Positions 2,870-29,659 of a stretch of DNA of 64,000 bases are shown here, piece by piece; the stretch's first letter is position 1, and the number at the start of each line of letters is the position of its first letter. The stretch spans positions 370,689-434,688 of IMG/VR virus record IMGVR_UViG_3300038463_000730; one strand, 5' to 3'. Under the pieces are notes generated by a model. The model was not told the origin of the DNA, did not search any database, and worked only from the letters and a program-made list of their open reading frames with translations. The position numbers and the translations under genes were made by a program.

Positions 2870-2911
2870 TTCTCCGTATCTTAATTTCTCGTAAACGTCT
2901 TTCCCATTTAG

Positions 2912-2986
2912 AGCCCACAGCTGGATTCAAACCAACGACTCCGCAGCACGAAGGCCGCGTACTCTGATCAACTGAGTTATGTGGGC
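2912..2986 (-). tRNA. tRNA-like, Arg(UCG)-like with 8-nt anticodon loop
   Basis: Full cloverleaf; stem CGCGG/CTGCG encloses CCTTCGTG; T loop TTTGAAT; no CCA. Confidence 0.65.
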
Positions 2987-3004
2987 AAAACTGTTACCGT
3001 AACT

Positions 3005-3080
3005 TGGAGCCCAGGGTTGGATTTGAACCAACGACCTTCCGATTAAAACCGGCTGCTCTAACAGACTGAGCTACCCGGGC
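3005..3080 (-). tRNA. tRNA-like, Lys(UUU)-like with 6/8-nt anticodon loop
   Basis: Cloverleaf with encoded CCA; CCGG-TTTTAA-TCGG. Confidence 0.65.
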
Positions 3081-3108
3081 CAATAATGAAACTATGAATT
3101 GAAGGTCA

Positions 3109-3158
3109 ACGATCGACCTCCGCGTGAAGTCTGCACCTGGGTGCATCGTACCGATCGT
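3109..3158 (-). ncRNA. Small structured spacer RNA
   Basis: 8-bp stem 3109-3116/3151-3158 enclosing hairpin TGCAC-CCAG-GTGCA. Confidence 0.3.
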
Positions 3159-3179
3159 AAGTAGGAAACCGTTAACCAG

Positions 3180-3257
3180 TGGGGAGTGCTGCTTTCGAGA
3201 CAGCGACCACTCCGGGTCGAAACCTTTCGTTGCTCTACCATTCTGAGCTAACTCCCC
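3180..3257 (-). ncRNA. tRNA-like RNA without a recognisable anticodon arm
   Basis: GGGGAGT/ACTCCCC acceptor, perfect D arm, T arm GCTGT-CTCGAAA-GCAGC; anticodon region contains GGT-TTCG-ACC. Confidence 0.65.
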
Positions 3258-3287
3258 GTAAACTACAACTCGACAAACGTAACTTGT

Positions 3288-3719
3288 TCATATCTGAACA
3301 ATGAATCGACCGGCCTCCTCAATTCCTTCGATCACCGATCGAGCCGTTGCTCGGTCTAGATCTTTTTGCTCTTCAGAAAGTTCCGTATACGGAACAAACA
3401 AATCCTCACCCTTCGAACTATAATACTCTTTGAACCCTTGCGATTTCTTCTTTGTCATCCAGCCTTCGTGGACTTTATCCGCAATCACTTCCAATACCGT
3501 TACATCTTCGAACTTCGAAAAATACACATCCATTCGGTACATCAACTCTTCGCCAATATCACCGTCTCCACCAGCCTGGAGATCCAGCTGTCCGTCACAT
3601 TGATCTTCATCAATCTTTCGAATTGCATTGAAAAGAGTAACAGACTGTTTGTTATGCGGAATTCCTTGCTCCCAACGTTCTTCAACGGTTAGTTTGGACG
3701 TGTCTTTTTTCTTCTTCAT
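3288..3719 (-). CDS. RyR-domain protein
   Basis: IADKVHEGW...FVPYTELSEEQKDLDR matches the RyR repeat; start moved to the ATG just after the tRNA-like element. Confidence 0.7.
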   Translation of the reverse strand: MKKKKDTSKLTVEERWEQGIPHNKQSVTLFNAIRKIDEDQCDGQLDLQAGGDGDIGEELMYRMDVYFSKFEDVTVLEVIADKVHEGWMTKKKSQGFKEYYSSKGEDLFVPYTELSEEQKDLDRATARSVIEGIEEAGRFIVQI

Positions 3720-3722
3720 GAG

Positions 3723-3797
3723 CGGGACGAGCCGGATTTGAACCAACGTTCGGGCAGATTTCGCCACCCGTATCCTAAGCCACTAGATGATCGTCCC
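3723..3797 (-). tRNA. tRNA-like RNA with extended anticodon arm (no clear anticodon)
   Basis: GGGACGA/TCGTCCC acceptor, Glu/Asp-type D arm, CGGGT-GGCGAAATCT-GCCCG (10-nt loop), 3-nt variable loop. Confidence 0.6.
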
Positions 3798-3807
3798 AAA
3801 GAAAAAC

Positions 3808-3905
3808 GATTCAGAAACCTCACTAACATTTCGAACTATTAGTGCTGCACGTAAGCTTTCAATAATATAAATCAGAAATCTGTTTTATGCTTACTTTCGT
3901 GAATC
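3808..3905 (-). ncRNA. Structured RNA with T-loop-like hairpin
   Basis: Outer stem GATTCA/TGAATC, stem GTAAGC/GCTTAC, hairpin CACTAATA-GTTCGAAA-TGTTAGTG. Confidence 0.4.
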
Positions 3906-3912
3906 ATCTTCT

Positions 3913-3990
3913 TGGCTCGCGCTGATGGATTTGAACCACCGACCTTCCACCCGCTAAGGTGAACGCTCTAACAGACTGAGCTAAGCGCGA
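3913..3990 (-). tRNA. tRNA-like, Val-type body with 8-nt anticodon loop CUUAGCGG
   Basis: Cloverleaf with CCA; TTCAC/GTGGA stem; short variable loop. Confidence 0.65.
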
Positions 3991-3997
3991 ATGATAA

Positions 3998-4477
3998 TTA
4001 CTCGAACAATACTTTGTACACCTCCCGTAGTTTACCTAGCCAGGAGCGCCGAACGGGGCTCGAACCCGTGACCAAGGCATTTAGAGGGCCCTGCTCTGCC
4101 GCTGAGCTATCGACGCGCTTTAGGTCTACGTAGTTACGTAGAGCCAAAGGAAAGCTACTAGTAAGAGAGATCGACGACGCTGACCCAGGCTCAAATGCAA
4201 TCGCTGTTAGGCTATGATTAAGATCTTCTTCGGTAAAAGCTAAGTACCGAGCGCCTATTTCGTCTGCCTTCGCCTTGAGGCTAAGAAGGGCTGCTTCATT
4301 CTCAACACTTAATAGAACTACTGTGTTCGAGTTGACATGCCACTCTTTCGTAAGTTCGGGCCATGCCTGGCTAAAATCAATTGCTGCGTGCAACATCTGA
4401 GATGCCTGTTGGCCAGCACGCAAATCGTTTCGTGTAACGACATAGAATTTAGCAGGTGCGTTCGTCATCTACGACAT
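3998..4477 (-). CDS. Pth2-family peptidyl-tRNA hydrolase-like protein with in-frame TAG at codon 3 (alternative start at 4468)
   Basis: YVVTRNDL..GQQASQ..HAA, NTVVLLSV, E.DLNHSLTAIA, FPLAL motifs; SD GGAGAG 8 nt before ATG-TCG-TAG-ATG. Confidence 0.75.
4045..4116 (-). tRNA. Amber-suppressor tRNA (anticodon CUA) embedded in the pth2 ORF
   Basis: 72-nt cloverleaf; loop CT-CTA-AA (anticodon 4082-4084); one C31:U39 mismatch; no CCA. Confidence 0.8.
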
Positions 4478-10925: not shown

Positions 10926-11222
10926 TCATTTCATTGCCCTCATTTTCTGACACATGAACCGGTCGTAATCTTTCTGGTGCTTCAGCGCGTTTACAAAGTC
11001 TTCGAGACCACTATGGTTGAATGACCAGCTCGTATTCCCATGATGATACACCATCGTTCCAGGCGTATAGCTTATTGAATTGGTGTTGACCTTTATCTCC
11101 AAAGATAGGTGCTTAGAACACCAAATACAAATCCCATTGTAATTGTCTAACCCGAACCGAACGTCTTTTATGCGATGGCAATGGACTAATGATAATCGAA
11201 TAAGTAGCTCCCTAGAGAGCAT
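10926..11222 (-). CDS. Hypothetical protein (family B-like C-terminus)
   Basis: CxxC; YDRFMCQKMRAMK. Confidence 0.55.
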   Translation of the reverse strand: MLSRELLIRLSLVHCHRIKDVRFGLDNYNGICIWCSKHLSLEIKVNTNSISYTPGTMVYHHGNTSWSFNHSGLEDFVNALKHQKDYDRFMCQKMRAMK

Positions 11223-11994
11223 CTTTCAACCTTTGGTACAGTTCATCTGCAATGGTTTCGGATAGCCCACTCATCTGTCCATCGTTGATATCGACGACGA
11301 TTAGTTTCTCTTCTGCGGTCTCGGCAACATCTACCGCACAGAACCTAACGTGACCTTTAGTGCGAGCCGCAACTTCACGAACCCACCCTTGGTCTACTTG
11401 TTTCGGGGCCTCGGGAAGGTCATCGACATGGCTCGACCAGTAGTATGCCGATGTTAGCACTTGACCATCGAGAACGAAATGCCTCCATTCGTTTGTGATC
11501 GGCAAATCTTGGATACCGATGAGATACGTCTTGAGCGGAACATAACGTCGGATATAGATCGGCTGAGCACCGATCATATAATCTTGGGTTAGGTTGTCAT
11601 AGACCTTGATCGCGGCATTCCTATCCGCCGCGTACATCGAAGTCTTCCACTGATGCTTCTTCGAGTTGGTTTTGCCCTTCAGAACGAAAGCTCCGTCCTT
11701 CGGAACGTCTTCCAATCGGTACCAAGTCTGCGGTGTGACATCGGCCAGCTCTTCGGCCCAGTTTCTCAAATCCGCCACCCAATTATGCTGAGCGAACGTA
11801 TTGATCATACTGGCACCAACATAATTGATATCGTACTCTTGCTCTTTGTAGAAAGGCAGAGCGCAATATCGAGCCAGTACCAAATCCCCGGATTGAATCG
11901 TCATCCTTGATGACGTCGTGTAAAAGAACTGGTTAGCCGCAGCCAATTCTTTCGAATCCATATCCCCTTCGCGATACAAAATGACAGGACGCAT
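11212..11994 (-). CDS. ATP-grasp domain protein
   Basis: FVLKG, YIRRYVPL, EWRHFV, AVDVA, DINDGQMSG. Confidence 0.75.
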   Translation of the reverse strand: MRPVILYREGDMDSKELAAANQFFYTTSSRMTIQSGDLVLARYCALPFYKEQEYDINYVGASMINTFAQHNWVADLRNWAEELADVTPQTWYRLEDVPKDGAFVLKGKTNSKKHQWKTSMYAADRNAAIKVYDNLTQDYMIGAQPIYIRRYVPLKTYLIGIQDLPITNEWRHFVLDGQVLTSAYYWSSHVDDLPEAPKQVDQGWVREVAARTKGHVRFCAVDVAETAEEKLIVVDINDGQMSGLSETIADELYQRLKDAL

Positions 11995-12036
11995 TCCAAT
12001 TGAATGCTTCCACAACTGCCCGTATCGACAAAACGG

Positions 12037-14052: not shown

Positions 14053-14961
14053 TTATGCAAGTGACTTAGGGTCTTTCCAAGAGTCTTGAGTCAAAAACCC
14101 GGCGAAAAATGGCGCGGACAAACCCGGCCTACTGATCCAGCAGAGGAACGGCTTCTCGATGCGAAGCATCGGCGGAGTAGAACGCGCCGCAAGACCACGC
14201 ATCATCCCGACCGCCACGGCAGACTCGGCTCGTGCTCCGATCTCGTTCATCTTGAACTTGGTTTGCTGAAGCGCCTGCGAAATCTTCCACCACTCATCCT
14301 TCTTCGGCCCGTCGATGACTTGCGTCTTCATGCCGAGGAGCCAACCGATATCGACCTCCTGATTGAGATCGACCATTGGAAACACGACGCCTTCGTACTC
14401 ACGACTCGGGATCAAGTTGGCCGCGATGTCCTGAACCTTCGCCGTGAGCTTCAGCCCTTCCAACTCCGTCTCGGCGATCGTCATGTAGACGTGGTCACCG
14501 GTTTTCGTTTCGAGCTGAGCAATCGGGTGAGGATGCTTCTTTGAACTGAGGATGCTGGAGTTGTCTCCCTTGACGCAGACGCCGGGATACTCCTGGCTCC
14601 GATCACCATTGAAGTAGACGTGACTCTTCGTTCCGGGCTCGACCCACTCGACCAGAACATCCATGATGGAGACGCAGCCGAACTCGCCCCGGTCCTTGTT
14701 GAAGTCCTGAAGCTTGATGGTGAAACCGCGCGACTTCATCCAATCGTTCAATTCGGCGGCTACCTCGGAGACCCTTGTTTGAATTTCCGATAGACTCGTT
14801 GCCTCCTTGATGATCTTGTCCGTATAGGTATCGGCCAAGAAAAGCTTCTGCTGATCGTTGTCCGAGATCCAGCCGTTGGTCTTCCCGAGATACTCCACGG
14901 CGTTGTAGACAGCCGTGACGATCGGGAGGGTGCAGGACGTTTTGCTTGTTGTCTTTTCCAT
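14053..14961 (-). CDS. Divergent serpin-like protein
   Basis: LNDWM, s3A-like strand ending in W, FPMVDL..LLGM, hinge MNEIGARAESAVAV, RIEKPFLCWI..FFAG. Confidence 0.65.
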   Translation of the reverse strand: MEKTTSKTSCTLPIVTAVYNAVEYLGKTNGWISDNDQQKLFLADTYTDKIIKEATSLSEIQTRVSEVAAELNDWMKSRGFTIKLQDFNKDRGEFGCVSIMDVLVEWVEPGTKSHVYFNGDRSQEYPGVCVKGDNSSILSSKKHPHPIAQLETKTGDHVYMTIAETELEGLKLTAKVQDIAANLIPSREYEGVVFPMVDLNQEVDIGWLLGMKTQVIDGPKKDEWWKISQALQQTKFKMNEIGARAESAVAVGMMRGLAARSTPPMLRIEKPFLCWISRPGLSAPFFAGFLTQDSWKDPKSLA

Positions 14962-14996
14962 GTTCGTCTCCTACTTTCCAGTCTTGAGAGGCAGTT

Positions 14997-16024: not shown

Positions 16025-16714
16025 CTATTTCTTTTCCGCCTTACACGTATCACACCAGCAACCGCACCCAACGAGGCACGGTCCGGTATGAAGACACGCA
16101 TCCGTTACATTGTTCCCGCCACGTTTTTGATTGACGTAGCCTCTGAACGTCAGAGATATCCGCTCGCCACATTGAAAGCTGGCCTTCGGAATACGATGCT
16201 CGAAACGATCCTGCATACCAGGCGCCATAAAGCAAGCGCTCCCATTACCGAGCTTCAGTCTCGTTTCGGACTGGTCTTCATAGACCGTCGCATCGAATTG
16301 CTTCTTCGGCCTGAAACAAATCTCGCGCTCAACGCCCAAGCTCACCGTAACGATCGGGCGAGCGTCGTCCATCTCGGGTGAGTCGTCCGCATGCCACCCA
16401 AGGTGGTCAGATTGGTTCAGGTAGCGATTGAGGAAGCACACCTCGAACTTCGGAACGATGTTCGGGTACAACGTCGGAGCAAGCTTCTCCAACTCCAAAC
16501 GAATCGCCAGGATGGCCGGGATCATCGGGCGCGGAAGATACTCCCGGACACCACGACCTCGACCATAGACATACGGATTGGGAAAGTCGTTGCAATAGTA
16601 TTCGCAACGCGGGGCATCGCTACGACGCTCCCATTCCAACCCATTCTGCAAAGCCTCCAAGGTCCGATCCGGATCTTGAACGAAGTTGGGTATGTATTGC
16701 GTCGGTGCTTTCAT
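16025..16714 (-). CDS. AlkB-like 2OG-Fe(II) dioxygenase
   Basis: NRY..GWHADD, IVTVSLG, EHRIPK, RISLTFR. Confidence 0.9.
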   Translation of the reverse strand: MKAPTQYIPNFVQDPDRTLEALQNGLEWERRSDAPRCEYYCNDFPNPYVYGRGRGVREYLPRPMIPAILAIRLELEKLAPTLYPNIVPKFEVCFLNRYLNQSDHLGWHADDSPEMDDARPIVTVSLGVEREICFRPKKQFDATVYEDQSETRLKLGNGSACFMAPGMQDRFEHRIPKASFQCGERISLTFRGYVNQKRGGNNVTDACLHTGPCLVGCGCWCDTCKAEKK

Positions 16715-20237: not shown

Positions 20238-21401
20238 TTACTCGACGCTCGTGATTACACCAGCGGCGACAGTTCGTCCACCCTCACGAACGGCGAACCG
20301 CACTCCAGGCTCCATCCCGACCGGCTTCTGTAGAAGCAACGTGACATCCGCGTTATCTCCTGGAGAGATCACGCTCTCGAAACCTTCGATGCTTCCCGTG
20401 ACATCGGTTGGCCCGAAAAAGAATTGAGGACGGTAACCCGCGCTGATTGCCGTGTGACGTCCGCCTTCCTTCGTCGGGATCATATACAGCTTCGCTTTAG
20501 CCTTGGTGTGAGGCTTGACGCTACCAGGCAGAATGATGATCTGTCCCTTCTCTACCTCATTGCGATCGACCCCGCGAAGTTTCAATCCGACATTTTCTCC
20601 GGCGCGCGCTTCCAATTGTGACTTGTGGAACATTTCGATTCCGGTCACGACAACCTCGCGCGGCTTCGAATCGACATCGACGAAGCCAATAATCTCGACC
20701 GTTGCGTTGACGGGCAACACACCGCGCTCGACCTTCCCGGTAACAACCGTTCCAATCCCTTTGATCGTGTGAACGCCTTCAATCGGCATCATGAACGGAG
20801 CATCATAGTTACGCACCGGATCGGTAATGTGAGTCTGCATTGCACCGAGTAACTCTTGGATGCAACCGCCATCCTCAGCCGGATTACGATAGGCCTTCAG
20901 TGCCGAACCTTTCACGACCGGCGAATCGGTATAGCCGTGCATCTTGAGGCAGTCGTTCACTTCCTCGATGACAAGTTCGAGCAACTCGGGGTCCGCCACG
21001 TCAACCTTGTTAACGAACACCACGATTTTCGAAACACCAACCTGTTTTGCCAACAGGATATGTTCCTTGGTCTGGTATTGTGTACCTTGAGAACCATCGA
21101 CCAACAGGATTGCGCCATCCATCTGCGCGGCTCCGGTGATCATGTTCTTGATGTAATCCGCGTGTCCGGGGCAATCGATATGCGCATAGTGACGCTTATC
21201 GGTCTCGTACTCGACGTGAGCGATCTGGATCGTAACGGTCTTCGAGTCATCTCGAACCGTTCCGCCCTTCGCGATATCCGCGTACTCTTTGCCCTTAGCA
21301 AGCTTCAACTGCTCCTGAACGGCCAGGATTGCCGCCGTGAGAGTTGTCTTACCATGATCAACGTGCCCAATCGTTCCAACATTCACATGTGTCTTTGACA
21401 T
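20238..21401 (-). CDS. tuf: Elongation factor Tu (divergent)
   Basis: GHVDHGKTT, DCPGHADYIKNMITGAAQMDG, NKVD, GSAL, GYRPQF. Confidence 0.97.
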   Translation of the reverse strand: MSKTHVNVGTIGHVDHGKTTLTAAILAVQEQLKLAKGKEYADIAKGGTVRDDSKTVTIQIAHVEYETDKRHYAHIDCPGHADYIKNMITGAAQMDGAILLVDGSQGTQYQTKEHILLAKQVGVSKIVVFVNKVDVADPELLELVIEEVNDCLKMHGYTDSPVVKGSALKAYRNPAEDGGCIQELLGAMQTHITDPVRNYDAPFMMPIEGVHTIKGIGTVVTGKVERGVLPVNATVEIIGFVDVDSKPREVVVTGIEMFHKSQLEARAGENVGLKLRGVDRNEVEKGQIIILPGSVKPHTKAKAKLYMIPTKEGGRHTAISAGYRPQFFFGPTDVTGSIEGFESVISPGDNADVTLLLQKPVGMEPGVRFAVREGGRTVAAGVITSVE

Positions 21402-21869: not shown

Positions 21870-22082
21870 TTACCTTTGATTGAATCCACGACCCAATGGG
21901 GCAACCGTAATGGTTTTCTCACCGTCTTTGGTTCGCATCATCAAATCGAAGTGATCGGATAGCCCGATGATTTGATCGGAGTTGTAATCCCCAATCAATC
22001 CCTTCGGGGTATCCTGGTAGGGCAGGCCTTTAGCCTGGAAGTCCTTCCAGGCCTCGGGCCAAACGATCAGCGCGTACCTCAT
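21870..22082 (-). CDS. Hypothetical protein
   Basis: ATGA overlap with the nadE stop. Confidence 0.5.
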   Translation of the reverse strand: MRYALIVWPEAWKDFQAKGLPYQDTPKGLIGDYNSDQIIGLSDHFDLMMRTKDGEKTITVAPLGRGFNQR

Positions 22083-22978
22083 ACGTCTACGTAACCAAGA
22101 CCCAGCAACAAACCGGTATGAACCTGGCAGACCGGCATATTCGGGTTGTGCTTGTGGCGCGAGACCTTCTCCATCCGGTGCAACGTCTTCAGTACGTGTC
22201 GTTCCCGCTCGGAGTATGAGCCCCATTGTTCATGTTTCTCCGGATGGTTGTCGTGGAAGATCATGTTGGTCTTCACGTCTTCCTTGTCCGCCCACTCGAT
22301 CTCGTCGTACGTCAGCCCTAGTTCCTTCTCGTCCTCCTGGCCAGCATCGGCACCCCAGAGGTCCGCGCTCGGTTTGGCTCGGTAGATTGCGGTCGCGGCC
22401 GGACCCATCGATTTCTTGCCGCCATCGGTTGTGAGATGGTGGAACAACGAGTTGACTTCGCTCTTCCATAGATCGGCAATCGGTGCGATATCGACGCAAC
22501 CGTCACCAAACTTCTGGTAGTAGCGCGTAATATGATCCTCGCTTCGGTTGCCCGTGCCGAGGATGATCCCATTCAATGCATGAGCCATGAGTGACAGCGG
22601 CGGAGCCCGGAGACATGAGCGTAGTGCTCCGGCAACAGCTCGATCGTTCGTGTCCTTGGTTGCTAGGTTGTGTCGCCCGACTTGATCGTTGAACTGGCGC
22701 ATGACCGAAGCATGAGCATCGACTAGGTCGATCTTGATCATCTTAATCCCTTGCTCTTCGGCAAAGGCATTGGCCCGGTCGAACGCCGAGGGCGAACTAT
22801 GACAGGGAAGGTTGGCCCAGAGCGACGGGATGCCGGTCTGCTTGGCCAGGAGAGCTACTAGCGCCGAGTCGATTCCGCCCGACAAGCCTCCAACCCAAGC
22901 GGCAGCACCAGCCTTGGCTTGGTAGTCCGACATCCATGTCACGATATGACCGGCAACCATTTGATGATTCTTGATCAT
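22079..22978 (-). CDS. nadE: NH3-dependent NAD+ synthetase
   Basis: GLSGGIDS PP-loop, GTGNRSE, KFGDG..DIAPIADLWKSEV, PSADL, DEKELG. Confidence 0.93.
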   Translation of the reverse strand: MIKNHQMVAGHIVTWMSDYQAKAGAAAWVGGLSGGIDSALVALLAKQTGIPSLWANLPCHSSPSAFDRANAFAEEQGIKMIKIDLVDAHASVMRQFNDQVGRHNLATKDTNDRAVAGALRSCLRAPPLSLMAHALNGIILGTGNRSEDHITRYYQKFGDGCVDIAPIADLWKSEVNSLFHHLTTDGGKKSMGPAATAIYRAKPSADLWGADAGQEDEKELGLTYDEIEWADKEDVKTNMIFHDNHPEKHEQWGSYSERERHVLKTLHRMEKVSRHKHNPNMPVCQVHTGLLLGLGYVDV

Positions 22979-28181: not shown

Positions 28182-28487
28182 CTATTTCACTCTCTTGTTC
28201 GAGTTCGCTGGGAACTCTGTATCTAATTCGTTGAGTGCTTCGTCGTATAGTTTGTTATAGTTCTTTTCAGCCTCCTTATTCAGGCGGTCAGCTTCAAGCT
28301 CCGCTTCGGATAGTCGGACTCGTTTCCTCGCTTCTGCGATCACTTCAGCAGCAGGATCTTTTGGCTTCAACTTATTCCACAGTACAGTGAAGAATTTGAC
28401 GCCAAGTATTACGACTAATCCTCCTCCGCCAAAAAGCAGGATTGCAGCTAAGAGTTCTTCAAAAGCGGGCATTGTTTTTTGACTCAC
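28182..28487 (-). CDS. Single-TM protein
   Basis: N-terminal TM plus coiled coil. Confidence 0.6.
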   Translation of the reverse strand: MSQKTMPAFEELLAAILLFGGGGLVVILGVKFFTVLWNKLKPKDPAAEVIAEARKRVRLSEAELEADRLNKEAEKNYNKLYDEALNELDTEFPANSNKRVK

Positions 28488-29659
28488 GGTTTAGCGAGAT
28501 TGTATCCTTCACCAACTAGCTTGACTTGCATCCGGCTATCCAAGCGAGGTTCATAACGTTCTTTGACCGTGTTGAGAACCCAGCCTTCGCGAAGGTGCTT
28601 ACCGCCAATCGTGGTCATACCTTCTGCCAACGGATACATCTCCTCCTTACCGAGCCACGGTCCCCGATAAAGCTCGGGCACCGGATCCAACCCGGCAGCC
28701 CGTATCATAGCGACCTTGTCGTCGTAATCCAAGTAACGTTTCGTGGATTCGTTGAAGACGTCAAAGACGAACAACTTCGTTTGCAAAGCTCCGTTCAAGA
28801 CAGTTGCTTCGTAACGAAATCCTTTGACTTGTCCTACAACTTCTCCGAAGAAGACCATCATCGGAAATTGCTGGAGTTTGTTTTCCAGATCGTAACGAAT
28901 CGCTATGTCCCACCACATATCGTCTTCGTCACGCTTCTTGTAGTAATTCCTGCTCTTAACCCAGAGCTGGGTACCGTCATGGCAAAAAGCTGCGTTCGAA
29001 CCATGAAGCTTTTCCGTGAGGACAACCTCTTCTTTCTCCTGAAGACAGAGAAGGTATTTCCTCACGCCATCGATGTCGTAGTGCGGGATAGTCCAGCCTT
29101 TTGGCGGCGAAGCTTGATTCGCACCTTTGGTCTTCTTCGCACCAGGAAGATTATCCTCTTCCTCTTCTTCGTGTTTCTTTAGCCAGAGCGCGTCAACGAT
29201 CTGATCACCAACGCTCCATGGAACATTAATGGTCTCGGCAGAGAGGCTTGCCAATCCTTCTGGCGGCAAGACACTTTGTTTCAGAATTGACTTCGCCGGA
29301 AGCAAAGTCAGCGGCATCAACATTCCTTGGGAATAAGTCCCACGAATGCGCTTCGCCTTGATGACCCGGTATTTTTCCGGGACCGATCCAACGGTATACT
29401 TAGGACCCAAACGGCGAGTCTTTAGCTCACCATTCTCCTCGTATTTCTCGTGGATGGCGGGACAAAGAAAGTAGAACGGATCCGTATCCGGAACGATCGA
29501 ATCGATCGGAATATAGCAAACCAGATCCCCAACTCGGTACTCGTCCCGCTTAACGATGACGGGGTAGTCCGTGAGAACGGTAGCAATATCCAGAACATCC
29601 GCATCAGGATGCTTACGGATCGACTCGATCACAACGACCTGAGGTTGCCAGTCAGACAT
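28484..29659 (-). CDS. RNA ligase, Rnl2/DRB0094 family
   Basis: N-terminal HPDAD..GDLVCYIPIDS module; motif I EKLHG; FGE, FVFD, REGWV, K motifs. Confidence 0.9.
   Translation of the reverse strand: MSDWQPQVVVIESIRKHPDADVLDIATVLTDYPVIVKRDEYRVGDLVCYIPIDSIVPDTDPFYFLCPAIHEKYEENGELKTRRLGPKYTVGSVPEKYRVIKAKRIRGTYSQGMLMPLTLLPAKSILKQSVLPPEGLASLSAETINVPWSVGDQIVDALWLKKHEEEEEDNLPGAKKTKGANQASPPKGWTIPHYDIDGVRKYLLCLQEKEEVVLTEKLHGSNAAFCHDGTQLWVKSRNYYKKRDEDDMWWDIAIRYDLENKLQQFPMMVFFGEVVGQVKGFRYEATVLNGALQTKLFVFDVFNESTKRYLDYDDKVAMIRAAGLDPVPELYRGPWLGKEEMYPLAEGMTTIGGKHLREGWVLNTVKERYEPRLDSRMQVKLVGEGYNLAKP

What the first reader, a model, noticed from the sequence alone, without database searches (positions are those of the whole stretch)
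14053..14961. Phage-encoded serpin-like protein
Seen: serpin landmarks occur in the correct order: N-x-W helix F segment, strand s3A ending in W, FP..DL..LLGM, hinge NEIGARAESAVAV, reactive loop GMMRGLAARS and C-terminal KPFL..FFAG. At 302 aa it is shorter than typical serpins, apparently lacking N-terminal helices. Established: viral serpins are well known in poxviruses. I am not aware of characterised phage serpins. Inference: an inhibitor of host proteases, possibly protease- or caspase-like-based defence.
Basis: partly seen in the sequence, partly recalled or inferred. Interest (0 to 1): 0.68.

Follow-up and report, generated by a model that had tools for sequence, protein, structure and literature searches.

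The report
Miniature serpin in a huge phage
A 435-kb peat bacteriophage encodes a stripped-down 302-residue serpin whose protease-trapping hinge is intact and whose bait loop carries an arginine; it belongs to an undescribed mini-serpin family shared with Asgard archaea, tiny symbiotic bacteria and other huge phages, and may disarm a host protease.

Summary
Sequence evidence alone is borderline: Pfam Serpin scores 23.3 bits against a cutoff of 27, on the C-terminal 65 residues only. A 65-member family profile finds only serpins in PDB (E 8e-9). The AlphaFold model (pLDDT 90.9) matches serpins only (Z 15.5; next unrelated fold Z 3.5). The record is a real huge phage (terminase, 24 tRNAs, 434.7 kb). 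The protein is a miniature serpin: helix A is absent, about 40-45 residues covering helices C and D and half of strand s2A are deleted, loops are trimmed, and there is a conserved C-terminal tail. The hinge is invariant and fits an inhibitory serpin. The loop after it is hypervariable, but 78% of members have Arg/Lys at the 15th-16th residue after the P17 Glu (here R255), followed by a small residue. Most members lack a signal peptide. The family also occurs in Thorarchaeota, Patescibacteria, DPANN, Dependentiae and other huge phages, and I found no paper describing it. Best reading: a cytoplasmic suicide inhibitor of an Arg/Lys-specific host protease, possibly a defence protease. The target is inferred, not shown.

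The parts
14053..14961 (-). Mini-serpin ORF, 302 aa plus TAA stop
   Evidence: identical protein on a 502,994-bp JGI contig and in two other runs; an independent peat run carries the 2.1-kb stretch with 0 differences, and three SNPs in another run are all synonymous
14968..14972 (-). Shine-Dalgarno AGGAG, 6 nt upstream of the ATG
   Evidence: read directly from the sequence
14887..14943 (-). Residues 7-25: strand s6B and helix B; the protein starts here, so helix A is absent
   Evidence: DSSP of the model. VIA-align ranges of all full-length serpins begin at the end of their helix A opposite model residues 1-3. This assignment rests on structural ranges only; there is no sequence signal
14767..14880 (-). 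Residues 28-65: remnant of s2A (NGWIS), helix E, strand s1A; about 40-45 residues (hC, hD, first half of s2A) are missing between residue 26 and residue 29
   Evidence: hhalign local alignment to canonical serpins L072-L079; DSSP
14734..14760 (-). Residues 68-76: helix F with invariant N72 (LNDWM = INxWV motif)
14644..14679 (-). Residues 95-106: strand s3A ending in the invariant breach Trp W106
14350..14631 (-). Residues 111-204: s4C, s3C, s1B-s3B, shortened hG/hH, s2C (FPMVDL), s6A
   Evidence: family profile vs PAI-1; hhalign; DSSP
14212..14286 (-). Residues 226-250: strand s5A and hinge (P17 E240, P15 G242, P14 A243, P12 A245, P10 S247, P9 A248, P8 V249, P7 A250)
   Evidence: Pfam and PDB alignments; hinge invariance in 117 sequences
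14170..14211 (-). Residues 251-264: exposed hypervariable reactive-centre loop VGMMRGLAARSTPP; predicted P1 = R255 (codon 14197-14199), alternative R260
   Evidence: pLDDT below 50 for residues 246-255; loop statistics
14092..14169 (-). Residues 265-290: s1C, s4B (KPFL), s5B (PFFAG)
14056..14091 (-). Residues 291-302: family-specific C-terminal tail (W295 near-invariant, P298 invariant), with no counterpart in canonical serpins
   Evidence: W-x-x-P motif in 110 of 120 members; the 291-300 block has pLDDT 95, and residues 301-302 have 84

Best explanation
The gene encodes a cytoplasmic, inhibitory miniature serpin. As in other serpins, an exposed reactive-centre loop offers a bait peptide bond, predicted here after R255 in G-M-M-R|G-L-A-A. 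A target protease cuts it and becomes covalently trapped as the loop inserts into beta-sheet A as a new strand. The target is most likely a host, not phage, protease that cuts after Arg/Lys. In a phage, the most plausible use is to neutralise a protease that would otherwise harm the infection. Candidates are the arginine-specific caspase-like effectors of abortive-infection systems, or a trypsin-fold serine protease. What is shown: serpin homology and fold, the truncated architecture, an inhibitory-type hinge, a basic bait conserved across the family, no signal peptide, a phage genome, and purifying selection. What is inferred: that the loop actually inserts in this truncated scaffold, which residue is P1, and the identity and role of the target.
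For: Fold and homology. Hinge in 117 family members: P15 Gly 117/117, P14 Ala 117/117, P10 Ser 117/117, P9 Ala 111, P8 Val 102, P7 Ala 112. Even positions (P14 to P4) are small or hydrophobic and odd positions (P13, P11) are charged, which is the alternation expected of a strand that inserts into sheet A. Scaffold against bait: pairwise identity is 0.79 in s5A plus hinge and 0.15 in the loop. Bait: 91/117 members have R/K at the 15th or 16th residue after the P17 Glu (background R+K is 0.11 per residue), and the next residue is mostly Cys, Gly or Ser. Cytoplasmic: 74/120 members, including this one, start within 10 residues of the s6B motif with no leader. Target not phage-encoded: no Trypsin_2, Peptidase_S8 or Peptidase_C14 in the 434.7-kb record. 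Real gene: SD motif; identical in independent peat samples, and 3 of 3 SNPs are synonymous. [quoted passage not shown] The window's closest clade-mates sit in phage-like gene arrays, and the nearest ESM Atlas clusters are mostly Uroviricota where taxa are known.
Against: No biochemical or expression evidence exists (no RNA run holds the stretch). The scaffold lacks hA, hC, hD and half of s2A, and whether it remains metastable is unknown. By strict counting the basic residue is one or two positions short of the canonical P1. By C-terminal spacing R260-S261 aligns with the P1-P1' of protease nexin-1 and alpha-1-antitrypsin, so the P1 assignment is uncertain. No protease gene is a conserved neighbour in 60 related loci. 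Five cellular carriers have no Peptidase_C14, so a caspase-like target is not supported as the family's ancestral partner. No PADLOC hit. The host is unknown, so no candidate target could be examined.
Confidence: 0.5

Rival explanations
1. General proteolysis control rather than counter-defence. The serpin inhibits ordinary host trypsin-fold or subtilisin-type housekeeping proteases to protect phage proteins, the same role the family has in its cellular carriers. The phage copy is simply a borrowed housekeeping gene.
For: The family is mostly found in cellular genomes next to housekeeping genes (Obg, RpoA, ABC transporters). All five carriers tested have Trypsin_2 proteases and none has C14. 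Spence et al. 2021 propose intracellular housekeeping roles for prokaryotic serpins (PMC8233489).
Against: Trypsin_2 (HtrA-type) proteases are near-universal (12-13 of 14 control genomes in the two searches) and mostly periplasmic, so their presence says little. The bait loop is hypervariable (identity 0.15) and paralogues are tandemly duplicated, which fits conflict better than housekeeping. The carriers are enriched in symbionts, parasites, predators and viruses.
Confidence: 0.25
2. A non-inhibitory serpin-fold protein (binding protein, chaperone or decoy) that has lost the stressed-to-relaxed mechanism along with a quarter of the scaffold.
For: hA, hC, hD and half of s2A are missing. The shutter His is replaced by Gln (Q232). 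Non-inhibitory serpins are well known (e.g. HSP47, PEDF, maspin and angiotensinogen among the fold hits). The predicted P1 is off register by 1-2 residues.
Against: Non-inhibitory serpins typically lose the hinge consensus (my own knowledge). Here P15 Gly, P14 Ala and P10 Ser are invariant in 117 sequences and the buried/exposed alternation is kept to P4. The breach Trp and helix F Asn are invariant. CrmA shows that a truncated serpin can still inhibit.
Confidence: 0.13
3. It regulates a phage-encoded protease, for example by timing a prohead maturation protease.
For: Huge phages encode maturation proteases, and the serpin has no signal peptide, so it would share the compartment.
Against: No trypsin-, subtilisin- or caspase-type protease is in the phage record. 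To my knowledge serpins are not known to inhibit phage prohead-protease folds. The gene lies in an accessory region with tRNAs, EF-Tu, AlkB and NAD synthase, far from the terminase at about 204 kb. Cellular carriers have no phage morphogenesis genes nearby.
Confidence: 0.05
4. Not a phage gene: cellular contamination, a mis-assembly, or a small cellular genome mistaken for a virus.
For: IMG/VR flags the record as 'provirus', trimmed from a 503-kb contig. The P0091 homolog on a 530-kb contig is nearly identical to the copy in a Dependentiae MAG (L041; branch lengths 0.054 and 0.02, 100* support), so that contig is probably a Dependentiae genome. The region carries EF-Tu and tRNAs.
Against: Large terminase E 3.6e-56. 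Phage helicase, RNA ligase and D5-like hits in the window. 391 of 486 ORFs lie on one strand, with 24 tRNAs. CheckV estimates 100% completeness. The serpin lies 50 kb inside the record, flanked by phage-like genes on both sides. The same arrangement appears in independent samples.
Confidence: 0.02

Closest known systems
CrmA (cowpox virus SPI-2), the 'minimal serpin' that inhibits caspases
   Same: Virus-encoded, intracellular, truncated serpin scaffold; CrmA is called a minimal serpin in PMC7863939. It gives a structural match (1m93_B, Z 7.9 for the cleaved fragment). The bait loop is about one residue shorter than canonical (for CrmA this is my recollection, not checked here). The proposed use, blocking a host death or defence protease, is the same idea.
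   Different: CrmA is 341 aa (my recollection); this protein is 302 aa and its family runs 278-312 aa for the single-domain members. Additional elements are missing here (all of hA, hC, hD and half of s2A). CrmA's P1 is Asp, and here it is predicted Arg. No detectable sequence relationship beyond the superfamily. The host is a bacterium. Function here is untested.
AtSerpin1 (Arabidopsis) inhibiting metacaspase 9
   Same: A serpin acting as a suicide inhibitor of an Arg/Lys-specific caspase-family cysteine protease. 3le2 is a strong fold match (Z 14.2). That it has a basic P1 and is intracellular is my recollection.
   Different: AtSerpin1 is a full-length canonical serpin (chain length 393) and eukaryotic, with a demonstrated target.
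Canonical prokaryotic serpins (thermopin, tengpin, miropin, chloropin; Acidobacteria serpins L072-L079)
   Same: Same superfamily and same hinge logic. Thermopin 1mtp, tengpin 2pee and miropin 5ncs are fold matches at Z 11.8-14.4. [quoted passage not shown]
   Different: Canonical ones match Pfam Serpin end to end at about 400 bits, whereas the mini family scores 20-33 bits on the last 65 residues only. Canonical ones keep hA, hC, hD and a full s2A, and many are secreted (all eight used here have hydrophobic N-termini). Cellular carriers of the mini family had no canonical serpin.
Serpins of eukaryotic giant viruses, poxviruses, baculoviruses and iridoviruses (BFVD)
   Same: Viral serpin-fold proteins; 27 BFVD matches at E<=1e-3.
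   Different: All named matches are from viruses of eukaryotes, and all but one (Myxoma M152R, 273 aa) are 306-657 aa. None is from a phage.

Membership tests
Serpin superfamily (Pfam PF00079 / MEROPS I4) | Serpin fold: three beta-sheets around a helical core, with an exposed loop between s5A and s1C | tested here: met
   AF2 pLDDT 90.9, pTM 0.87. Foldseek: 326 PDB hits at E<=1e-3, and all of the ~50 listed entries are serpins. VIA-align ranks 1-29 are all serpins, Z up to 15.5, about 264/302 residues aligned, and the next fold is Z 3.5
Serpin superfamily (Pfam PF00079 / MEROPS I4) | Sequence match to the Pfam Serpin model above the gathering score | tested here: not met
   23.3 bits against a cutoff of 27, residues 221-288 only. 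Ten relatives score 24-33 bits, again on profile positions about 300-367 only. Homology is nevertheless significant at profile level: PDB serpins E 8.4e-9, hhalign vs canonical serpins E 3.1e-6. The N-terminal 112 residues alone find no serpin
Serpin superfamily (Pfam PF00079 / MEROPS I4) | Full complement of helices A-I and a five-stranded sheet A with full-length s2A | tested here: not met
   hA is absent. About 40-45 residues spanning hC, hD and the first half of s2A are deleted, and hG/hH are merged and shortened. This is not strictly defining, because CrmA is also truncated
Inhibitory serpins | Hinge consensus: P17 Glu, P15 Gly, small uncharged P14, small residues P12-P9 | tested here: met
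   E240, G242, A243, A245, S247, A248. Family-wide: P15 G 117/117, P14 A 117/117, P10 S 117/117
Inhibitory serpins | Loop length: P1 is the 17th residue counted from the P17 Glu as residue 1 (little tolerance) | tested here: inconclusive
   The conserved basic residue is the 15th or 16th after the P17 Glu (91/117; R255 is the 16th here), i.e. 1-2 residues short. A second Arg (R260) matches the C-terminal spacing of nexin-1 and alpha-1-antitrypsin
Inhibitory serpins | Conserved breach and shutter residues (breach Trp at the end of s3A, helix F Asn, s5A His) | tested here: inconclusive
   W106 and N72 are invariant and aligned to their canonical counterparts. The s5A His position is Gln (Q232, near-invariant). 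The helix B Ser pair could not be mapped
Inhibitory serpins | Metastable native state, stressed-to-relaxed transition, and a covalent SDS-stable complex with the target protease | not testable with these tools
   Needs protein biochemistry. The model only shows a native-like form with a disordered loop
Phage anti-defence proteins | Demonstrated or genomically linked antagonism of a named defence system | tested here: not met
   No PADLOC hit for the serpin, and for its neighbours only one weak, presumably spurious Cas12b match at 16.6 bits. No conserved neighbour. No paper links serpins to phage counter-defence. This remains a hypothesis

The most novel reading that the evidence does not exclude
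Huge phages use a miniature serpin as a covalent trap for the arginine-specific caspase-like or trypsin-like effector proteases of bacterial abortive-infection systems (type IV Thoeris, the type III CRISPR PCaspase cascade, gasdermin activators). That would be a bacterial-virus counterpart of poxvirus CrmA. The same ~300-residue scaffold, the smallest working serpin, would serve symbionts, parasites and Asgard archaea in protease conflicts.
Probability: 0.25. Interest if true: 0.85.

Novelty: new variant of a known kind. Interest (0 to 1): 0.7.

Why it matters
Serpins are one of the best-studied protein families, yet this ~300-residue branch falls just under Pfam's threshold. It would also have been removed by the length filter of the main superfamily phylogeny (sequences more than 25% shorter than the median were discarded; PMC8233489), and most copies are annotated as hypothetical. 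If it inhibits, it defines the minimal scaffold that can still perform the spring-loaded loop insertion (no helix A, C or D, and half of s2A). That is directly testable and useful for serpin engineering. For phage biology it would add covalent protease trapping to the known counter-defence strategies, at a time when Arg-specific caspase-like proteases are emerging as immune effectors in bacteria. The distribution (Asgard archaea, CPR, DPANN, Dependentiae, Bdellovibrionota, huge phages) also raises an evolutionary question about protease conflicts among cell-dependent lifestyles.

Tried and rejected
1. A profile of the N-terminal 112 residues alone against PDB found no serpin even at E<10. That half is linked to serpins only by the fold and by hhalign.
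2. I considered an alternative register in which residues 60-65 are s2A, 68-76 are hE and helix F is deleted. It was suggested by VIA ranges on cleaved-serpin fragments starting at model residue 57-58. I rejected it for three reasons: hhalign aligns LNDWM to INxWV and NGWIS to the end of s2A; N72 is invariant; and the N72-to-W106 spacing (34) matches my recollection of the canonical helix F Asn to breach Trp spacing (about 36-38).
3. The global hhalign placed residues 1-27 on hC/hD at low confidence. I overrode it with the structural ranges, which start at the end of hA.
4. tblastn of the protein and of P0079 against 50,697 deposited phage genomes found no mini-serpin.
5. A search for a conserved neighbour in 60 loci found none family-wide; synteny exists only within Thorarchaeota sub-clades.
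6. Target protease in the phage's own genome: none of Trypsin_2, S8 or C14.
7. Endogenous caspase-like partner in five cellular carriers: none. Trypsin_2 is present in all, but it is ubiquitous and so uninformative.
8. I considered the phage EF-Tu as a protease-resistant variant linked to the serpin. The Lys residues at the two Thoeris-caspase cleavage sites are shared by all 120 closest EF-Tu homologs, including ones on Mb-size contigs, and three complete serpin-bearing huge phages have no EF-Tu. It is therefore a lineage trait, not a phage adaptation and not a linked module.
9. PADLOC gave nothing for the serpin and only one weak, presumably spurious Cas12b hit for a neighbour; NCBIfam gave nothing for the serpin and three relatives.
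10. The downstream 249-aa neighbour has no family, no usable Atlas hit and a poor Atlas model.
11. Host inference from EF-Tu gave a single named relative (Polyangiaceae), which is too weak to use.
12. I did not run complex prediction, because there was no specific candidate partner. I did not run the large representative search, because the word search had already found the family.
Full report
THE OBSERVATION. Window 14053-14961 on the minus strand is an intact ORF of 302 codons ending in TAA. An AGGAG Shine-Dalgarno lies 6 nt upstream of the ATG. The gene sits in a long co-directional array. The upstream 88-aa ORF ends 35 nt before it, and the next downstream ORF (249 aa) starts 26 nt after it. 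The exact protein is also found on a 502,994-bp JGI contig and on two short contigs from other runs. The surrounding DNA occurs in peat metagenomes from several studies. One independent run carries the whole 2.1-kb stretch without a single difference, and another shows three SNPs inside the ORF, all at third codon positions and all synonymous. It is a real, conserved gene.

IS IT A SERPIN? By single-sequence methods the answer is borderline. Pfam Serpin scores 23.3 bits against a gathering score of 27 (E 4.4e-5), and only residues 221-288 match, to profile positions 300-365 of 370. The best PDB sequence hit is glia-derived nexin at E 0.01, over the same stretch. PHROGs gave only two weak, unrelated hits (E 0.065 and 0.084) and NCBIfam nothing.

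The word-based homolog search found 120 clusters of mostly 280-310-aa proteins at 30-50% identity. Many have a precomputed PF00079 hit, and three are named 'serpin family protein' by NCBI. A profile of 65 of them finds only serpins in PDB at E<=0.01 (36 distinct sequences; best is PAI-1 at E 8.4e-9, profile 128-277 against PAI-1 212-376).

AlphaFold2 with that alignment gives a confident model: pLDDT 90.9, pTM 0.87, with only residues 246-255 below 50. Foldseek returns 326 PDB hits at E<=1e-3, and all of the ~50 entries listed are serpins. An exhaustive VIA-align scan ranks 29 serpins first (Z up to 15.5, about 264 residues aligned, rmsd about 4 A), and the next unrelated chain drops to Z 3.5.

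ANATOMY. I fetched eight canonical serpins from Acidobacteria genomes. Each matches Pfam positions 2-370 at about 400 bits. I then aligned the two families profile to profile (E 3.1e-6, 245 columns). The register is as follows:
- NGWIS (28-32) is the C-terminal end of s2A.
- Residues 36-56 are helix E.
- IQTRVS (60-65) is s1A.
- LNDWM (71-75) is the helix F INxWV motif, with N72 invariant.
- Residues 95-106 are s3A, ending in the invariant breach Trp W106.
- Residues 135-162 are s1B-s3B.
- Residues 169-180 are a merged hG/hH.
- FPMVDL is s2C, NQEVDI is s6A and WLLGM is hI.
- Residues 226-244 are s5A plus the hinge.
- KPFL is s4B and PFFAG is s5B.

In every structural alignment to a full-length serpin, the model's first residues pair with the end of helix A. 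So strand 7-9 is s6B and helix 11-25 is hB. Together this gives the deletion map:
- Helix A is absent.
- About 40-45 residues between the end of hB (G26) and the tail of s2A are gone, covering hC, hD and the first half of s2A.
- Loops in the C-terminal half are trimmed by about 17 residues.
- A 12-residue C-terminal tail is added, with W295 near-invariant and P298 invariant. A W-x-x-P motif occurs in 110 of 120 members.

The N-terminal 112 residues have no sequence-detectable similarity to any solved serpin, so the hB assignment rests on structure alone. At 302 aa (single-domain family members run 278-312 aa) this is shorter than CrmA, which the literature calls 'a minimal serpin' (PMC7863939) and which I recall as 341 aa.

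IS IT BUILT TO INHIBIT? In 117 family members the hinge is essentially fixed: P17 Glu 109, P15 Gly 117, P14 Ala 117, P10 Ser 117, P9 Ala 111, P8 Val 102, P7 Ala 112. Even positions from P14 to P4 are small or hydrophobic, and odd positions P13 and P11 are charged. That alternation is what a segment needs in order to insert as strand 4 of sheet A.

Immediately after the hinge, conservation collapses. Mean pairwise identity is 0.79 in s5A plus hinge and 0.15 in the next ten residues. Within that variable loop one feature recurs: 91 of 117 members have Arg or Lys at the 15th or 16th residue after the P17 Glu, against a background R+K frequency of 0.11. The residue before is usually hydrophobic and the residue after is small (Cys 23, Gly 21, Ser 17). 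In the phage protein this is G-M-M-R255|G-L-A-A.

The register is one to two residues shorter than the canonical 17, which may go with the shortened body. A second Arg (R260-S261) has the same spacing to the PF motif as the P1-P1' of nexin-1 and alpha-1-antitrypsin. I regard R255 as the more likely P1, but not as settled. Cysteine is four-fold enriched in the loop.

Seventy-four of 120 members, including this one, start within ten residues of s6B with no leader, so they are predicted to be cytoplasmic. A few have hydrophobic leaders.

WHOSE GENE IS IT? The window is the last 64 kb of a 434,688-bp IMG/VR record. The record has the following features:
- A large terminase (phrog_675, E 3.6e-56).
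- 24 tRNAs, 48% GC, and 391 of 486 long ORFs on one strand.
- Phage-type helicase, RNA ligase and D5-like genes in the window.
- Around the serpin: an R2K ATP-grasp, AlkB, EF-Tu, NAD synthase and tRNAs.

It is a huge phage from peat.

The family, however, is not confined to phages. A scan of IMG/VR found seven viral contigs (26-447 kb), three of them complete at 304-447 kb. A scan of GTDB species representatives found 53 loci:
- About 19 in MAGs labelled Asgard (17 Thorarchaeota, one Hermodarchaeota, one Promethearchaeota), plus several 'uncultured archaeon' bins that fall in the same clade.
- About 13 in Patescibacteria.
- The rest in DPANN, Dependentiae/Babeliales, Bdellovibrionota, Acidobacteria and several proteobacterial bins, including a 513-kb contig.

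Cellular loci have housekeeping neighbours (Obg, RpoA, ABC transporters). No neighbour is conserved across the family.

On a tree, the Asgard copies form one clade (SH-aLRT 100) with tandem paralogues. Bacterial and viral copies are interleaved, with viral copies in at least four places. The window's protein sits in a supported clade of six (96). Its two members with longer context lie in phage-like arrays of short one-directional ORFs, one of them with EF-Ts, tRNA_bind and YggL genes.

The nearest ESM Atlas clusters (119 and 71 members, about 300 aa, only 17-21% with Pfam Serpin) are mostly Uroviricota where taxa are known. Five cellular carriers have no canonical serpin, and a Thorarchaeote has three mini-serpin paralogues.

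WHAT IS KNOWN? The phrases 'phage serpin' and 'phage-encoded serpin' occur in none of the papers returned. Papers holding both 'serpin' and 'phage-encoded' concern phage display, engineering or surnames. A jumbo-phage comparative genomics review never mentions serpins. The comprehensive serpin phylogeny never mentions phages and removed sequences more than 25% shorter than the median (PMC8233489).

Among 50,697 deposited phage genomes there is no mini-serpin. A canonical serpin hits only two unannotated gut-metagenome 'Bacteriophage sp.' contigs. In BFVD, all named structural matches are from viruses of eukaryotes. Absence from these libraries is not proof that nothing has been published.

MECHANISM AND TARGET. 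The scaffold, hinge and bait argue for a classical suicide-substrate inhibitor aimed at a protease that cuts after Arg/Lys, acting in the cytoplasm. The phage itself has no trypsin-, subtilisin- or caspase-type protease, so the target should be a host protein.

Two classes fit. The first is trypsin-fold or subtilisin-type serine proteases, the usual serpin targets. The second is Arg/Lys-specific caspase-family cysteine proteases. For the second class there is precedent on both sides. AtSerpin1 is a suicide inhibitor of metacaspase 9, and CrmA inhibits caspases. [quoted passage not shown] The PCaspase of a type III-B CRISPR cascade is thought to behave similarly. The phage loop resembles such a site.

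This is an inference. Five cellular carriers lack any Peptidase_C14, PADLOC finds nothing, and no genomic linkage to a protease exists. My estimates are about 0.97 for 'is a serpin homolog', about 0.7 for 'is inhibitory', about 0.55 for 'P1 is R255', about 0.5 for the combined statement that it traps an Arg/Lys-specific host protease, and about 0.25 for the specific counter-defence reading.

VERDICT. The protein is a member of an undescribed, truncated branch of the serpin superfamily that huge phages share with Asgard archaea and with several lineages that live on or in other cells. I rate it a new variant of a known kind, with interest 0.7. It offers a clean biochemical test of the minimal serpin scaffold and a concrete, testable candidate for a new class of phage counter-defence.

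Noticed in passing
window 20238-21401 (-): The phage encodes its own EF-Tu (387 aa; PDB best E 5e-129). The two residues that align with the EF-Tu sites cut by the type IV Thoeris caspase (R45, R59) are Lys (K38, K54), and switch I reads KTVTI instead of RGITI. All 120 closest homologs (72-80% identity, many on 250-550-kb contigs but also on Mb-size ones) share this, so it is a trait of a distinct EF-Tu lineage rather than a phage-specific change. Three other serpin-bearing huge phages have no EF-Tu.
   Followed up: partly
window 2911-4116 (-): A tRNA with anticodon CTA (amber-suppressor-like, called tRNA-Pyl by ARAGORN) lies at 4043-4116, and three tRNA-like genes with irregular anticodon loops lie at 2911-2986, 3005-3080 and 3913-3990. 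The whole phage has 24 tRNA genes. The serpin ORF itself reads normally in table 11 and ends in TAA.
   Followed up: no
family members P0070, P0073, P0076, P0078, P0080, P0082, P0087, P0088, P0092, P0094, P0095, P0101; P0043; ESM Atlas clusters: A subfamily of ~375-aa mini-serpins carries a conserved ~90-residue N-terminal domain (motif MHMGP...GDV..W). One member is fused to a WGR domain. The ESM Atlas lists sigma-70 (regions 2 and 4) proteins of 414-608 aa whose models align to the mini-serpin over about 255 residues.
   Followed up: no
reactive loops of the family (window 14170-14211 in this protein): Cysteine is four-fold enriched in the reactive loop (0.042 vs 0.010). 47 of 117 members have at least one loop Cys, and Cys is the commonest residue right after the conserved Arg/Lys. 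The window's own loop has none.
   Followed up: partly
L026, L054, L055, L014 and G001 contig C138: Tandem or nearby paralogous mini-serpin genes occur in Thorarchaeota/Promethearchaeota MAGs and in a Saccharibacteria MAG (two copies 1-2 kb apart; three in one Thorarchaeote). This suggests local expansion with diverging bait loops.
   Followed up: partly
loci as a set: Named carriers are enriched in lineages that live on or in other cells (Saccharibacteria and other CPR, DPANN, Dependentiae/Babeliales, Bdellovibrionota, huge phages), besides Asgard archaea and Acidobacteria. MAG sampling bias was not controlled.
   Followed up: no
phage records MT835510.1 (32665-33882) and MT835777.1 (11160-12197): Two unannotated 'Bacteriophage sp.' contigs from human faecal metagenomes encode full-length canonical serpins (34% and 29% identity to an Acidobacteria serpin over 88-99% of its length). 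Whether they are true phage genes was not examined.
   Followed up: no
G000 as a whole; window = G000:370689-434688: IMG/VR labels the 434,688-bp record 'provirus', although it derives from a 502,994-bp contig and CheckV calls it 100% complete. The ~68 kb trimmed as 'host' may simply be more huge-phage genome.
   Followed up: no
window 11212-12015 (-), 16025-16714 (-), 22079-22978 (-), 28484-29659 (-): The serpin sits in an accessory region rich in host-takeover-type genes: an R2K-clade ATP-grasp (PF14243), an AlkB-like 2OG-Fe(II) oxygenase, NAD synthase and RNA ligase, interspersed with tRNAs.
   Followed up: partly
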